The notes: a model not told the origin generated them from the letters alone. A stretch of 33,317 bases of DNA from Octopus bimaculoides (GCF_001194135.2 NC_068989.1:42145268-42178584), one strand, 5' to 3'. Shown: positions 17,352 through 30,451, counted from the stretch's first letter. Numbers and translations: made by a program.

Positions 17352-17465
17352 AGTGTGTATTTGTGTGTGTGTGTGTGCGTCTGTGTGTGCACGTGTGTTT
17401 TAAGTGTGTATTTATGTTTGTATACATTTAGAGTACTGATGCTCAGAATCTTTACTCCCATACAG

Positions 17466-17612
17466 AACTAATAGAGTACATGAGTAACAAACTATCAAAG
17501 TACAACATTGAAAACGAAGCTTTCGAAGAGGAACTGACTAGCGTTGAAAAAGAATTGAGTATAAAGAAGGAAATCATTAGTAAACACCGTGAAAATATGG
17601 TTCAAGTTGATA
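17466..17612 (+). CDS. Coiled-coil gene exon 2 (147 nt, phase 1-1): LIEYMSNKLSKY...NMVQVD
   Basis: TACAG acceptor, A|GTAAGT donor, open frame, E/K-rich heptad pattern. Confidence 0.85.
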
Positions 17613-18151
17613 GTAAGTACATATATATATCTTATTGCTATCACCAGCTTCTTTTGAAGTCTATACATGGTAAAGCTAACGGAGGGAGCTGCTATTTGGT
17701 CCCACAAAATTTTTAGAAACGTATTAATGTTTGTTTTTTTATGTTCAGTTACAGTAAAAACAATTTTACATTAATCTAATGGTTTATTCTAGATTTTTGT
17801 AGAATCGAATCGACGATAGCTTAGCTGGCCGAAACTTCGAAGGTACCGTCAACAAAATTCTTGTTTAAGAATGATAAATGTTTTTAGAAATAGCTCCAAA
17901 AACTCCTTCACATCATTCCATATTGACTAAAAAAAAATCCCCCAAAACAGTATATGTCTGTATGTGTATGGGTGTGTGTGTGTATGAGTGTGTGCGTGTG
18001 TGGATTGAGTGTGTATACATATGTACATAATACGTACCTGCAAATACTTTCATACATACATACATACACACACACACATGTGTGTGTGTGTATGCATGTA
18101 TAACCAGGCCTATTCCCCATTTTTTAGGAGGGGGTAACCACAACAAAACAT

Positions 18152-18897
18152 ATGCTGGTTTACCCCTGCTGCATCATGCTAGTTCATACCCCTTTGAGCA
18201 ACGTTAGTATTCACTCATCTGTCCACCAACACTCTCGAAGCATTCCTATCATTTATAAAGTTTCTTGCCTCTCTCACTCCAACACCTCTAGCCACCAAAG
18301 CTTTCCTCATTCCATCCATCCACACAAACCGAAATCTGCCTCTGGTTCTGTTGCTTACCACTTCTACCTTCATCATCCTCCTTACCATCCGCTCCTCATC
18401 CATCCTCTCCATGTGGCCAAACCACCTCAACATTTGTCTATCCACTTTGCTTGTTAGTTTTTCTCTCATTCTTGCTCGCCTTCACACCTCCTCATTCCTC
18501 ATCCTGTCCATCCGTGTCACACCAACCATAGCCCTTAGACATCTCATCTCAAACACATCCAGTCGCCTCCTTTCCGCCTCTCTCAGCCCTCACATCTCTG
18601 CACCACATAACATTGTCGGCACAATCACGCCCTCAAACACACCTCTTTTCGCTTTCATACTCAACCTTTTATCTCTCAGCATACCTTTCACAACTTCAAG
18701 TGTCTTACTCCCCTCCCTCACTCTGCTGTCACGTGTGATCCCACATGCTTAAAAAACACTCATCTCCTCTAACATCTCACCATTTATACTCACATCCATC
18801 CTACCAGCCATTCCATCTCTCGAACATTTCATCACCTTACTCTTAGCTATATTCACTTTCAGTTTCCTCCTCTCACACACTCCAAACTCCACCAAAT
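18152..18897 (-). mobile_element. RTE-clade LINE, 5'-truncated ORF2 3' end
   Basis: KLKVNIAKSKVM...VIVPTMLCGAEM...LDVFEMRCLRAM...MLRWFGHMERM...RGRFRFVWMD with stops. Confidence 0.9.
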
Positions 18898-19624
18898 ACA
18901 TATAATATACATATATGTTCGAATATATTTTGTGTACACAATGTCTGTGTGTATGTATGTATCTTCTATACCATGATAAGGAAATCTTCTTATTAGTTAG
19001 TTGTAATCATATAACTTTTACCAAAGGAAAACAATTATTGAAGTCTCCACTGTCTAAAAAATTCCAATTTCAATACATTTTTATCAAAATATGGTTTTTG
19101 AAATTCTTTTATTAGTGAAGATTTCAACTACACACTAACCAGAAGATACATTTTTTTTTCACTGCGATATGCGTTTTTAACGTCTTACATTTTTCTCCTG
19201 TTTCCTAGCAACTTTCTCTTCCCTCTCTCTCTCCTCTCTTTTCATCTCTTTGTTTACATCTTGTTTCTGCTTGTCTTTCTATTTTTATATCCATGCAGCG
19301 TTGTCTCTCTAACGCTTATGCTCAACTTTTATTTGTTTTTCAAGGACCTTCTCCATTCAGTTTTCGTCTCTTCTCTCTCCCATATCCCCCGCCATATTTG
19401 CTTCTTTTAAACTAAGTTTGTATCCCTTCCTTTCTTATTTCATTTAATACTTTCTCCTCCGCACTATTAGTTTCATTTTCTTAGCAACACTTTCCTCTTT
19501 CTCTCTTTCTCTCTTCCTATCTCTCTCTCCCCCTCTCTCTCTCGCTCTGTGTCTTTTACTCTCTGTCTTTCTACCACCCTTATTCAATTTCTTTTCAGGA
19601 AAAATAAGTCATGACAAAGTTCTT

Positions 19625-22728: not shown

Positions 22729-22875
22729 ATCACATCAATAGTTTAACTCGTAGACTGACAGAGATGTCTGTTGAAATAGCTCCATATCGAGTAAAGTACA
22801 GTAACTGCGTGCGCTCTATAGAACCTCTTGAAGATTCCGTACAGAGAAAATCAAAAGCAGTTGAGCAGTTAGAAG
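22729..22875 (+). CDS. Coiled-coil gene exon 3 (147 nt, phase 1-1): HINSLTRRLTEM...KAVEQLE
   Basis: Poly-T tract plus CAAG acceptor, AAG|GTGAGT donor, open frame continuous with exons 2 and 4. Confidence 0.88.
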
Positions 22876-23098
22876 GTGAGTATCCGCTAGTATTTCTGCG
22901 TGCGTGTGTCTATATACAGGGTTGACCAAAAGTCACCCGACAGTAAATCAAATTTCCATAAATACTATCTGAAATTTTGTATTGACTCGAATGGAAAAAA
23001 TATGTCGCTCAAGAAGGACATAAGTTTGAAGAATTTTCATGATCATTATTTACATTATTTACGATTGACGGATATTTGTCCTCATCTTGTTTGATGTT

Positions 23099-23144
23099 AG
23101 CACAACGTTTCGGCTGATATACCTTCTAGCCTTCATCAGGTGTC
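23099..23144 (-). ncRNA. Minimal type I hammerhead ribozyme (left arm)
   Basis: GACAC-CTGATGA-A-GGCT...AGCC-GAAA-CGTT-GTGCT; intact core, palindromic ACGT stem III, GUU cleavage triplet. Confidence 0.75.
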
Positions 23145-23250
23145 TTGGGGAAATTTCGAACCTGGGTTTTCATTCGTAAGGCATTTTTCGATGTTGTTAT
23201 TGTCGTTATTATTATTATTATTATTATTATTATCATCATCATCATCATCA

Positions 23251-23325
<75 letters not shown>

Positions 23326-23638
23326 TCACTGCCTGGAATCGAACTCGGAATCTTGGGGTTAGTAGCCCGCGCTCTTAACCACTACACCATATGCCTGGGG
23401 TTAGTAGCCCGCGCTCTTAACCACTACGCCATATGCCCGTGGGCATATGGTGTAGTGGTTAAGAGCGCAGGCTACTAACCCCAAGATTCCGAGGGCATAT
23501 GGCGTAGTGGTTAAGAGCGCGGGCTACTAACCCGAGTTCGATTCCAGTTCGATTCCAGGTAGTGACCTGAATAATAATAAGAAGAAGAACATCGAAAAAT
23601 ACCTTAGGAATCAGAACCCAGGTTCGAAATTTCCCCAA

Positions 23639-23684
23639 GACACCTGATGAAGGCTGTAGGGTATATCAGTCGAAATGTTGTGTT
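23639..23684 (+). ncRNA. Minimal type I hammerhead ribozyme (right arm)
   Basis: GACAC-CTGATGA-A-GGCTG(10)CAGTC-GAAA-TGTT-GTGTT; ACGT has become ATGT (CpG decay). Confidence 0.7.
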
Positions 23685-24099
23685 AACAACAAACAAAATG
23701 AGGACAAATATCCGTCAATTGTAAATAATGTAAATAATGTACATAATTCCTCATCTCTTAAATATAGAGCTGAATTTTCATGATGTTTCATATTTAGTTG
23801 CTTTTATTAAATTCAATCACTTGTTAAACATAAATAAATCTTGGAATCAAATGGTTTTGATTTACTGTCAGGCGACTTTTGGTCAACCCTGTACGTAAGT
23901 GTGAATGGAGGACTGCGTTTCTTTCGGTTCTTTACGTCCTGATTGCAAATCCCGCCAAAGATAAGCCGTACTTTTCATCCTTTAGGGTTCGATAAAATAA
24001 AGTAGCAGTCAAGTACTAAGGTCGGTAGTATCGACTAACCCGCGTTCCCCTAAATTTCTGGCCTTGTAAATAAATTCAGTTTACTGATTAGAAATTTGT

Positions 24100-24310: not shown

Positions 24311-24504
24311 CACACACACGCACACACATACAAACACACTCACTCACTCACACATACACGCAAACACGCACACATTTCATTAAAAGTAAACTCCCACACT
24401 TTACGTCTGTCTTTGTATCGTCCCCCTCATCCTTCGCCCTGGTGGCACATAAATGAAATCCATTATTATCATTATTATTAATATATATATATTTGTTTTT
24501 CCAG

Positions 24505-24633
24505 AAAAATTGAACGAGGAACGTAAACGTGTCAAGAAATTGACGGAACAGATTGCAAGCATGCAGGGCAATCTTTTAAAATGTGTGAGGACACAGCAGG
24601 AAGCCAGTTGTGACACCTATAACGGAACTACTA
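24505..24633 (+). CDS. Coiled-coil gene exon 4 (129 nt, phase 1-1): KLNEERKRVKKL...CDTYNGTT
   Basis: TTTTTCCAG acceptor, A|GTATGG donor (alternative donor after 24584 possible), in-register similarity to exon 3. Confidence 0.8.
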
Positions 24634-30116: not shown

Positions 30117-30451
30117 ATTTATTTAACCAATTGAAATCCTTGGGATTACAGCCGTTTCGCAACATTCTTTATGAAATGATAATTTCATTGTAGAAGGAAT
30201 TATGTTTACATGTTTGCATTAATATGCATGCTCAGCATTATACAATATAATTGTATATGCACAGAACAATGCAGATAAAGAAACCTAGCTCTTGAGATCA
30301 CCGGAACATCATAGTTACACCAGCGATTGTACTCATTGGATTGTATAGTGCCAAGAATGCAAGTATAATTTCTTCTACACTAAAATTACTACTACATGAG
30401 GCTGGTTGCGAAACGGCCGTAGCCCCAAGGATGTCACGCGGTTAAATAAAT
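30117..30451. repeat. Old diverged palindromic element (~140-bp arms)
   Basis: Both arms share gcat..tatacaat, tgtagaag.aattat, ttgcgaaacggc.gta..cccaaggat and ggttaaataaat in inverted orientation. Confidence 0.75.

What the first reader, a model, noticed from the sequence alone, without database searches (positions are those of the whole stretch)
23044..23771. Zero-spacer palindromic retroelement: two tRNA-headed units fused head-to-head, inserted as one event
Seen: the insertion is bounded by a 13-bp TSD (GAATTTTCATGAT) and splits an otherwise intact MITE, so it arrived as one unit. Its arms (23044-23438 minus, 23441-23771 plus) are reverse complements around a 2-nt loop (GCCC-GT-GGGC). Each arm reads outward: tRNA-like head (A box TGGCGTAGTGG, CTACTAA loop, B box GTTCGATTCC), then (AAT)n, hammerhead, (GTAAATAAT) tail. 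The right arm has 32 extra nt at its 3' end. Neither arm has a TTTT run on its sense strand, which fits divergent Pol III transcription from the centre. Both arms also carry a tandem duplication of the head's 5' half. Established: variable-length TSDs indicate target-primed reverse transcription, and Penelope-like elements often carry inverted terminal repeats and hammerheads. Inference: a SINE-like parasite of a Penelope-type RT whose cDNA folds back at the tRNA head and is integrated as an opened hairpin, or whose genomic unit is itself a bidirectional Pol III cassette. I cannot place this architecture in a named family; it may sit unclassified in repeat libraries.
Basis: partly seen in the sequence, partly recalled or inferred. 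Interest (0 to 1): 0.9.

Follow-up and report, generated by a model that had tools for sequence, protein, structure and literature searches.

The report
Head-to-head SINE pair, one insertion
Two copies of a short tRNA-promoter retroposon (SINE) went into this octopus-type genome head-to-head in one insertion event, and related copies elsewhere show the same pattern, which suggests (without proving) a Penelope-type reverse transcriptase that copies RNA from both cut DNA ends.

Summary
The structure is real. A 728-bp insertion (23044-23771) sits between perfect 13-bp target-site duplications and splits a 238-bp TA-flanked MITE. It consists of two SINE copies joined head-to-head around a 2-nt filler. 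Each arm has Pol III A and B boxes, an (AAT)n tract, a ~130-nt body and a (GTAAATAAT)n tail. Only the right arm carries 32 extra 3' bases.

Two details fail. The "hammerhead" is not recognised by Rfam, breaks hammerhead rules and has no covariation support. The head is not detected as a tRNA.

I recovered other copies, including one from Octopus bimaculoides. Five of six loci of this family with a visible 5' side carry an inverted partner, of any length, and where duplications are legible a single one flanks the whole composite (10 and 13 bp; 14 and ~8-13 bp in two related-family loci). The 32-nt extension belongs to the element, is present in about half of the 3' ends, and is better conserved than the body.

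These features match published Penelope-like element (PLE) insertions: inverted partners, an optional 30-40-bp tail, and cleavage plus extension of both strands. The best reading is reverse transcription primed from both target strands, probably by a PLE enzyme. Neither a folded-back cDNA nor a bidirectional cassette fits. No autonomous partner was found.

The parts
22915..23893 (.). Host MITE-like element. Without the insertion it is 238 bp, with 38-nt terminal inverted repeats (22915-22952 / 23856-23893) and TA flanks. It is split by the SINE pair.
   Evidence: I7; (joined flanks; no other copy in the window)
23031..23043 (.). Left target-site duplication, GAATTTTCATGAT
   Evidence: D8
23772..23784 (.). 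Right target-site duplication, GAATTTTCATGAT
   Evidence: D8
23044..23062 (-). Left arm, short 3' end: (GTAAATAAT)2 plus G, with no extension
23063..23193 (-). Left arm body, which includes the conserved central domain with the hammerhead-like box
23194..23321 (-). Left arm internal microsatellite: (AAT)n with an embedded (GAT)7
23322..23395 (-). Left arm complete head. The B box is at 23335-23345. The A box carries a CpG-to-TpG change.
23396..23438 (-). Left inner partial head (element positions 1-43, with an exact A box at 23421-23431)
   Evidence: D4/I3/I4
23439..23440 (.). GT filler at the centre of the palindrome
   Evidence: I4
23441..23492 (+). Right inner partial head (element positions 1-52)
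   Evidence: D3/I2
23493..23569 (+). Right arm complete head. The A box is at 23500-23510. The B box is duplicated at 23535-23545 and 23546-23556. Nine bases are deleted relative to the other copies.
23570..23589 (+). Right arm short microsatellite, (AAT)3(AAG)3AA
23590..23720 (+). Right arm body. The hammerhead-like box has CTGATGA at 23644-23650 and GAAA at 23672-23675.
23721..23747 (+). Right arm tail: three GTAAATAAT-type units, the third being GTACATAAT
23740..23771 (+). The 32 bases present only on the right arm. They are an optional 3' extension that belongs to the element.
   Evidence: unique in the window. Searches show the same sequence at the 3' end of copies in other loci, and 91% identity to L016 over tail plus extension.
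5401..5618 (-). Second copy of the same SINE in the window. It runs from the head down to ...GATGAGGACAT and lacks its own tail.
5614..5671 (+). The missing 3' end of the second copy (ATGAGGACAAAT...(GTAAATAAT)3) in the opposite orientation, abutting the head. The two pieces overlap by 7-9 nt. An assembly gap follows.

Best explanation
The insertion is the product of one integration event of a Pol III-type SINE.

Proposed mechanism (inferred from the structures, not observed):
1. The target was cut with a 13-bp stagger.
2. Each of the two 3' OH ends primed reverse transcription on the 3' module of a SINE RNA. The top strand started inside the (GTAAATAAT)n repeats. The bottom strand started 32 nt further downstream.
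3. Both cDNAs ran to the RNA 5' end.
4. There the enzyme switched template, adding a partial second head of 43 or 52 nt to each cDNA.
5. The two cDNA ends were joined with two untemplated bases, so each cDNA served as the template for the other's second strand.

The enzyme is most likely that of a Penelope-like element (reverse transcriptase plus GIY-YIG endonuclease). The only PLE protein characterised in vitro cleaves and extends both strands and starts at two sites 30-40 nt apart. This identification is an inference from the insertion signature, because no autonomous partner was identified.

After insertion the arms diverged by about 9% in the body, and the microsatellites changed length.
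For: One event: a perfect 13-bp duplication flanks the whole pair, and there is no internal duplication.

Two separate primings: the arms have different 3' ends.

The pattern recurs:
- Window copy 2 is inverted at its 3' part.
- L001 has two 5'-truncated copies head-to-head.
- L003 has a copy that begins at the element's 5' end (its head is internally deleted) plus an inverted 75-nt 3' piece, under a 10-bp duplication. The same structure appears in L004, from another sequencing run.
- L010 and L013 have two nearly full-length copies, each missing a few 5' bases, head-to-head.
- L016 (related family) has arms 96% complementary under a 14-bp duplication.
- L008 (related family) has a full copy facing 2.7 head-to-tail units. 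Its two ends differ by 35 nt, and it has an 8-bp exact duplication (11 of 13 by eye).
- Only L007 is solitary.

The extension belongs to the element and is optional:
- It appears in P0006 (Octopus bimaculoides), P0011, P0025, P0015, P0026, P0035, L006 and L007.
- It is absent in roughly half of the 3' ends.
- Tail plus extension is 91% identical to a distant genome, against 74% for the body.

The head duplication is found only in this palindrome.

Literature:
- PLE insertions have an inverted 5'-truncated copy at the 5' end and a 30-40-bp tail, often at one end only (PMC8557442).
- In rotifer PLEs, inverted repeat units lie under 8-10-bp duplications, a 31-bp tail is present, and palindromes occur at the inverted junction (PMC3846280).
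- The PAc protein cuts and extends both strands, is predicted to be a dimer, and has two reverse-transcription start sites that explain the tail (PMC11167929).
Against: - No autonomous element sharing the 3' module was found. The reverse-transcriptase fragments seen in the window (18218-19006) and in L008 look like LINE fragments and share no tail with the SINE.
- The sample is small: six loci of this family and two of a related one. They were found through spurious ORFs, not by a genome census.
- PLE partial tandems are normally a 3' part followed by a full copy. Here the repeated piece is a 5' part.
- The canonical PLE hammerhead is absent.
- At least three classes of 3' end are seen, not two.
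- The template-switch steps are inferred from one locus. The crosswise C/T pattern of the four head units rests on a single CpG site and could be chance.
Confidence: 0.55

Rival explanations
1. The SINE depends on a LINE. The inverted structures come from L1-style twin priming, in which the second-strand nick primes on the RNA, followed by ordinary end joining. No PLE is involved.
For: - Window copy 2 is a textbook twin-priming product. Its inverted and direct pieces are complementary parts of one RNA and overlap by 7-9 nt.
- Tails made of short tandem repeats are typical of SINEs that depend on LINEs (from knowledge; PMC4758252).
- LINEs, including Dong-R4 and CR1, are abundant and active in Octopus (PMC13282606).
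Against: - Classical twin priming does not duplicate the element. In the palindrome and in L001, L003, L010, L016 and L008 each arm has its own 3' end, so two separate initiations on the 3' module are required.
- Five of six loci with an inverted partner is far above what I would expect for a ~300-nt SINE; my recollection (not checked here) is about a quarter for much longer L1 insertions.
- An optional, conserved 32-40-nt extension beyond the repeats is described as a signature unique to PLEs (PMC11167929).
Confidence: 0.25
2. Either one cDNA folded back at the head and was integrated as an opened hairpin, or the palindrome itself is the transposing unit, a bidirectional Pol III cassette.
For: - The near-zero spacer, and the palindromic CATATG at the very 5' end of the head.
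- A and B boxes face outward in both arms, and there are no T4 runs on the sense strands.
- Self-priming has been proposed for PLE palindromic junctions (PMC3846280).
Against: - A fold-back gives mirror-image arms. Here the 3' ends differ by 32 nt and the inner heads by 9-10 nt.
- In other loci the partners are of very unequal length, and fillers of 2-36 nt separate them.
- Junctions differ at every locus and a solitary full-length copy exists, so the dimer is not inherited from a master copy.
Confidence: 0.07
3. Two independent insertions, the second landing exactly at the 5' end of the first. Or a later inverted duplication. Or an assembly artefact.
For: The window is a gapped draft assembly with nine runs of N.
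Against: - There is no second duplication around either arm.
- The flanks are direct repeats, not inverted ones.
- The arms differ by 13 substitutions in 150 nt plus indels, which a mirrored-read artefact would not produce.
- The same kind of composite was assembled independently from different sequencing runs (L003/L004 and L010/L013) and in contigs of hundreds of kilobases (267 and 421 kb; L008, L016).
Confidence: 0.05

Closest known systems
Complex insertions of Penelope-like elements (Penelope/Poseidon, Naiad, rotifer Pen families)
   Same: - An inverted 5'-truncated or full partner abuts the 5' end.
- A palindrome lies at the inverted junction.
- One short, variable target-site duplication flanks the whole composite.
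- An optional 30-40-bp tail is present, often at one end only.
- Head-to-tail partial tandems occur (seen in the related family in L008).
- AT-rich targets.
(PMC8557442, PMC3846280, PMC11167929)
   Different: - There is no reverse transcriptase or GIY-YIG ORF.
- The 5' end is a Pol III A/B-box head.
- No canonical hammerhead is present.
- The repeated piece in this locus is a 5' part of the element, not a 3' part.
- Sequence similarity to any PLE was not testable here.
L1 twin priming (5' inversion of LINE-1 insertions)
   Same: Both strands of the staggered break prime cDNA synthesis. The inverted segment and the direct segment sit under one duplication. Window copy 2 (5401-5671) fits this exactly.
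   Different: Twin priming splits one RNA into two non-overlapping pieces. The palindrome has two complete copies, each with its own 3' end.
tRNA-derived SINEs of cephalopods (OK, OR1 and OR2 of octopus; Ceph-SINEs)
   Same: The layout of head, body and short-repeat tail, and the very high SINE load of octopus genomes: 11.6% of the O. vulgaris genome, mostly unclassified families (PMC13282606). A central domain is shared between distant genomes, as in the SINE superfamilies.
   Different: I could not obtain the published consensus sequences, so whether this family has a name is unknown. An inverted-dimer insertion habit is not mentioned in any paper I could read.
Hammerhead-bearing non-autonomous elements (animal non-LTR retrozymes; from memory, the schistosome Sm-alpha SINE-like element)
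   Same: They are short, non-coding and thought to depend on PLEs. The related family in L008 forms short head-to-tail arrays. A CUGAUGA...GAAA box is present.
   Different: The box does not form a hammerhead by any test. There are no long tandem arrays in the window and no evidence of circular RNA.

Membership tests
Pol III (type 2 promoter) SINE | Internal A box (TRGCNNAGTGG) and B box (GGTTCGANNCC) at tRNA-like spacing near the 5' end | tested here: met
   An exact A box and a B box with one mismatch in both arms. Copy 2 has the A box only.
Pol III (type 2 promoter) SINE | Head demonstrably derived from a tRNA (cloverleaf or sequence match) | tested here: inconclusive
   ARAGORN finds nothing at default settings. 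At relaxed settings it calls two of three heads with conflicting identities, Val and Ser, and nothing in the third. Rfam finds no tRNA, even on 80 nt alone.
Pol III (type 2 promoter) SINE | Short, non-coding, dispersed in many copies, flanked by target-site duplications | tested here: met
   Three units in the window. Independent copies in O. bimaculoides, in contigs assembled from public sequencing runs (Logan) and in ENA contigs. Duplications of 10-14 bp.
Pol III (type 2 promoter) SINE | 3' end shared with an autonomous partner | not testable with these tools
   No cephalopod genome or repeat library could be searched. Scans of metagenome, genome and viral contigs found nothing.
Hammerhead ribozyme | Match to a curated hammerhead covariance model | tested here: not met
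   No hammerhead family at gathering score in the window or in L008. None at E<=10 on 1 kb or on 551 nt.
Hammerhead ribozyme | Core CUGANGA...GAAA with stem II directly after A9, an A15.1-U16.1 pair, a cleavable H17, and a stem I | tested here: not met
   Read directly:
- There is an extra A between A9 and stem II.
- A faces A at positions 15.1/16.1.
- No stem I partner exists.
- Copy 2 has GTGAAGA in place of the core.
- The minimum-energy fold does not form the motif.
Hammerhead ribozyme | Stems supported by covariation | tested here: not met
   Across 17 copies, 75.4% of cells pair, against 74.6% in shuffles. The covariation score is reached by 172 of 500 shuffles.
PLE-type (Penelope-like) insertion | Inverted 5'-truncated or full copy abutting the 5' end, with the whole composite under one target-site duplication | tested here: met
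   Window palindrome (13 bp), L003 (10 bp), L016 (14 bp) and L008 (8 bp exact; 11 of 13 by eye). L001 and L010 are also inverted, but their duplications are not legible.
PLE-type (Penelope-like) insertion | Optional 30-40-bp 3' tail that belongs to the element and is often present at one end only | tested here: met
   - 32 nt on the right arm only.
- The same sequence occurs in about half of the other 3' ends.
- 35 nt at one end only in L008; L003 has it on one arm only.

PLE-type (Penelope-like) insertion | Partial head-to-tail tandems (pseudo-LTRs) | tested here: inconclusive
   The related family in L008 has 2.7 head-to-tail units of 129 nt. In the window the repeated pieces are 5' parts of the head, which is not the usual form.
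PLE-type (Penelope-like) insertion | Sequence shared with an element that encodes a PLE reverse transcriptase and a GIY-YIG endonuclease | not testable with these tools
   No such ORF is present in the window or in the fetched loci. The only Pfam hits among the ORFs scanned are a mariner transposase fragment, a weak sub-threshold HAUS1-like match, and a precomputed RVT_1 hit on an L008 ORF that looks like an RTE-type LINE.
L1-type twin priming | The inverted and direct segments are adjoining parts of one RNA, with only a small overlap or deletion at the breakpoint | tested here: not met
   This is met by copy 2 at 5401-5671 (7-9-nt overlap). It is not met by the palindrome under review, whose arms are two complete copies.
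Tc1/mariner-type MITE (host element) | Terminal inverted repeats, a TA duplication, small size and no ORF | tested here: met
   38-nt repeats at 95%, TA on both sides, 238 bp once the insertion is removed. Multi-copy status could not be tested, since there is no other copy in the window.

The most novel reading that the evidence does not exclude
A superfamily of Pol III-headed SINEs is mobilised by Penelope-like elements rather than by LINEs. Its members share a conserved central domain and a conserved 3' module, and they occur in Octopus and in at least one distant invertebrate genome. As far as the papers I could search go, this would be a first clear SINE-PLE partnership. It would help explain the very large load of mostly unclassified SINEs in octopus. 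It would also mean that this machinery routinely plants long perfect hairpins inside introns, where they are ready-made double-stranded RNA for ADAR editing and small-RNA pathways.
Probability: 0.4. Interest if true: 0.75.

Novelty: new variant of a known kind. Interest (0 to 1): 0.55.

Why it matters
SINEs are generally taken to be parasites of LINEs, and I found no paper describing a Pol III-headed SINE that uses a PLE. The known non-autonomous PLE derivatives are hammerhead tandem repeats and copies bounded by PLE terminal repeats.

If the PLE reading holds, three things follow:
- The insertion signature seen here (inverted partner, optional tail, one duplication) would be a simple way to recognise such SINEs in other genomes.
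- These short elements would give clean, easily read examples of PLE integration products, whose mechanism is still poorly understood.
- It would link an abundant class of octopus repeats to the formation of intronic hairpins. This one would fold at about -470 kcal/mol as RNA.

If the partner turns out to be a LINE, the finding reduces to an unusually high rate of double-ended priming in one SINE family.

Tried and rejected
Searches that found nothing:
- Exact-pattern scans for the SINE body and head in metagenome contigs (two scans), prokaryotic genome contigs and viral contigs.
- A word-indexed protein search with the antisense SINE ORF.
- Exact look-up of ten window ORFs; none is in the collection.
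- A search with the mariner transposase fragment, meant to reach octopus contigs; the best hit was only 46% identical.
- A full-text search for the head sequence, and a search of the supplement of the O. vulgaris repeat paper.

Look-ups that were wasted:
- P0023 (O. bimaculoides dystrobrevin): the gene range was too long, so no DNA was returned.
- P0032: it turned out to be a bacterial protein, giving locus L009.
- A paper search for the sequencing-run accessions did not identify the organism.

What did work: a full HMMER scan with the 70-aa sense-frame ORF of the right arm found spurious ORFs lying over other copies. Their contigs were then fetched.

Ideas rejected:
- Hammerhead.
- The crosswise head pattern as proof of reciprocal template switching. 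It rests on one CpG site, and I estimate that two independent CpG changes would produce a crosswise pattern about one time in three.
- A stem between AUGAGGA and UCCUCAU that would enclose the tail. It appears in the minimum-energy fold, but the z-score is only -1.2.
- The weak Rfam hits to mir-885 and mir-2013 at the centre. They reflect hairpin shape only: 34 bits against a gathering score of 66.
- The LINE-like fragment at 18218-19006 as the partner. It shares no tail with the SINE.

Full report
**What is there**

The stretch 23044-23771 is an insertion bounded by a perfect 13-bp direct repeat, GAATTTTCATGAT, at 23031-23043 and 23772-23784 (D8). It interrupts a small element with 38-nt terminal inverted repeats that are 95% complementary (22915-22952 / 23856-23893) and TA flanks. 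With the insertion removed and one repeat kept, that element is 238 bp, a Tc1/mariner-style MITE by structure.

The insertion is two copies of one SINE joined head-to-head around a GT dinucleotide (I4). A three-way alignment with a further copy at 5401-5671 gives the unit:
- a ~75-nt head;
- an (AAT)n tract;
- a ~130-nt body;
- a tail of two or three GTAAATAAT units.

An exact A box and a B box with one mismatch are present in each arm, and neither arm has a T4 run on its sense strand. The right arm alone has 32 further bases before the repeat.

**What fails**

The hammerhead does not hold up.
- No hammerhead family matches at Rfam's gathering score, or at E<=10 on 1 kb.
- Read by hand, the CUGAUGA...GAAA box needs an extra base after A9, has A opposite A at positions 15.1/16.1, and has no stem I.
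- Copy 2 has GTGAAGA in place of the core.
- The minimum-energy fold does not form the motif.
- Across 17 copies from five sources, the two hairpins pair no better than column shuffles: 75.4% against 74.6%.

The box does belong to a sequence domain that is conserved between distant genomes. It is a conserved SINE domain, not a demonstrable ribozyme.

The head is called tRNA-like only on the strength of its promoter boxes. ARAGORN and Rfam do not recognise a tRNA.

The partial second head on each arm is real. The two differ in length, 43 nt against 52 nt, and every other head I could see is single. The duplication therefore belongs to this insertion event, not to the element.

**Getting other copies**

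Direct DNA scans of the public collections found nothing. A full HMMER scan with the sense-frame ORF of the right arm found 22 small predicted proteins that are translations of other copies.
- One is a UniProt entry of Octopus bimaculoides.
- Another is a SINE-derived stretch in an O. bimaculoides dystrobrevin isoform.

I fetched contigs for the others. Some are contigs from several sequencing runs of an unidentified, evidently related animal. The others are two long contigs of an ENA assembly (ERZ21867824) that shares nothing with the window except this SINE domain and tail.

**The pattern across loci**

Six loci of this family have a visible 5' side:

| Locus | Structure | Target-site duplication |
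|---|---|---|
| Window 23044-23771 | Full copy against full copy, 2-nt filler | 13 bp |
| Window 5401-5671 | Inverted main copy plus its own missing 3' end in direct orientation, 7-9-nt overlap; a classical twin-priming product | Not readable (assembly gap) |
| L001 | Two 5'-truncated copies head-to-head | Not legible |
| L003 (also L004, another run) | Copy starting at the element's 5' end (head internally deleted) plus an inverted 75-nt 3' piece, 15-nt filler | 10 bp |
| L010 (also L013, another run) | Two nearly full-length copies (a few 5' bases missing) head-to-head, about 18 nt between the arms | Not legible |
| L007 | Solitary | None clear |

Two loci of a related family in the distant genome show the same features:
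- L016 has two truncated copies that are 96% complementary, under a 14-bp duplication. One arm is 63 nt longer at its 3' end.
- L008 has a full copy facing 2.7 head-to-tail units of 129 nt. The arms are 97-98% complementary, and one 3' end is 35 nt shorter than the other. The duplication is 8 bp exact, or 11 of 13 by eye.

Two further predicted proteins, P0035 (the L016 locus itself) and P0037, read antisense tail followed by sense body in one ORF. P0037 therefore points to one more inverted junction.

**The 32-nt extension**

The same sequence (GTACATAATTCCTCATCTCTTAAATATAGAAC...) ends copies in O. bimaculoides and in L001, L003, L006, L007 and L016. About half of the 3' ends I tallied by eye stop inside the GTAAATAAT repeats instead.

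Tail plus extension is 91% identical between the window and L016, while the body is 74% identical. So the extension is the true, conserved 3' end of the element. The short ends are internal starts of reverse transcription.

**Mechanism**

These facts require two cDNAs, one primed from each strand of the staggered break, each starting on the 3' module of a SINE RNA and each free to stop anywhere.

- A folded-back single cDNA would give mirror-image arms with equal ends. That is not seen.
- A palindromic master copy would give the same junction everywhere. That is not seen either.

The young pairs are 96-98% complementary. The 9% difference between the window's arms (13 differences in 150 nt, 9 of them transitions) is therefore most simply decay since insertion. 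By hand count from the alignment, each of the three window units has about 6% private changes. That is close to the SINE burst at Jukes-Cantor distance 0.065 reported for O. vulgaris (PMC13282606).

Three steps are inferred from this one locus alone: the switch to a second template that added the partial heads, the two untemplated bases at the centre, and the use of each cDNA as the other's second-strand template.

**Which enzyme**

The published hallmarks of Penelope-like elements match point by point:
- an inverted 5'-truncated copy at the 5' end, partial tandems, and a 30-40-bp tail often at one end only (PMC8557442);
- inverted repeat units under 8-10-bp duplications, a 31-bp tail, and palindromes at the inverted junction (PMC3846280);
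- a purified PLE protein that cleaves and extends both strands, is predicted to be a dimer, and starts reverse transcription at two internal sites whose spacing explains the tail. The authors call this signature unique to PLEs (PMC11167929).

Octopus genomes carry active PLEs, and SINEs make up 11.6% of the O. vulgaris genome, mostly unclassified families.

Against this, I found no autonomous partner. The usual PLE hammerhead is missing. The sample is small, and it was reached through ORF artefacts rather than a census.

A LINE partner with frequent twin priming remains a serious rival. Copy 2 is exactly such a product, but that mechanism does not explain duplicated 3' ends or the conserved optional extension.

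**Verdict**

The hammerhead and the fold-back and cassette models are wrong.

I found no description of a Pol III-headed SINE with this insertion habit in the papers I could search. I rate it a new variant of a known kind, of moderate-to-good interest, pending a genome-wide census and identification of the partner.

Noticed in passing
window 5401-5671: A second copy of the same SINE. The head-to-body part is in minus orientation and lacks its tail. The missing tail piece follows in plus orientation, directly against the head, with a 7-9-nt overlap (ATGAGGACA). This is a clean twin-priming-type inversion. An (AT)n run and an assembly gap follow, so its target-site duplication cannot be read.
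   Followed up: yes
L008 9700-10400 and L016 10000-10340 (ENA ERZ21867824): A distant genome shares no other repeat with the window, yet has SINEs with a different head, the same central domain (CACCTGA[AT]GAAGGCYGGAGG...CGAAACGTTGTG) and nearly the same tail. The central domain therefore behaves like the conserved core of a SINE superfamily. I could not check whether it matches a named domain such as the Ceph domain.
   Followed up: partly
P0023 = XP_052825882.1 (O. bimaculoides dystrobrevin beta isoform X1): A 94-aa annotated isoform contains the peptide GEGWRVYQPKCCVNNKQDEDKYPSK, which is the sense translation of this SINE's body. This is either exonisation of a SINE or an annotation artefact.
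   Followed up: no
window 17432-17713, 22731-22877, 24504-24590 (+): Likely exons of a plus-strand coiled-coil gene. There is a weak HAUS1-like Pfam match (E=0.006, below cutoff) at 17432-17713. The stretches at 22731-22877 and 24504-24590 have splice-site-like boundaries. If these are exons, the MITE and the SINE palindrome lie in an intron, and the pre-mRNA would contain a hairpin of several hundred base pairs (about -470 kcal/mol).
   Followed up: partly
window 7706-8729 (-): A decayed mariner-type transposase in three ORF pieces. One piece has a Pfam Transposase_1 hit (E=9e-8).
   Followed up: partly
window 18218-19006 (-): A 5'-truncated fragment that resembles the C-terminal part of a LINE reverse transcriptase (...LRWFGHMERM...). 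It has no Pfam hit, and its 3' end shows no similarity to the SINE tail.
   Followed up: partly
window 23895-24075 (+): Directly after the MITE lies a fragment that resembles, from memory, another abundant octopus SINE family (...GGTTCGATAAAATAAAGTAGCAGTCAAGTACTAAGGTCGG...). It was not checked against any library.
   Followed up: no
window 30117-30451: Another inverted-repeat element: 100-nt arms, 76% complementary, 135 nt apart. It is probably an unrelated MITE.
   Followed up: no
window 23407-23472: Rfam gives sub-threshold hits to mir-885 (34 bits, gathering score 66) and mir-2013 on both strands at the palindrome centre. These reflect hairpin shape and are not evidence of a microRNA.
   Followed up: yes
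window 23737-23780 and the tails of other copies: An ATG in the third tail unit opens a frame (MYIIPHLLNIE...) that runs through the conserved 3' extension. In PLEs the ORF starts inside the terminal repeat, near the reverse-transcription start sites, so this frame could be a remnant of a partner's N-terminus. This is pure speculation.
   Followed up: no
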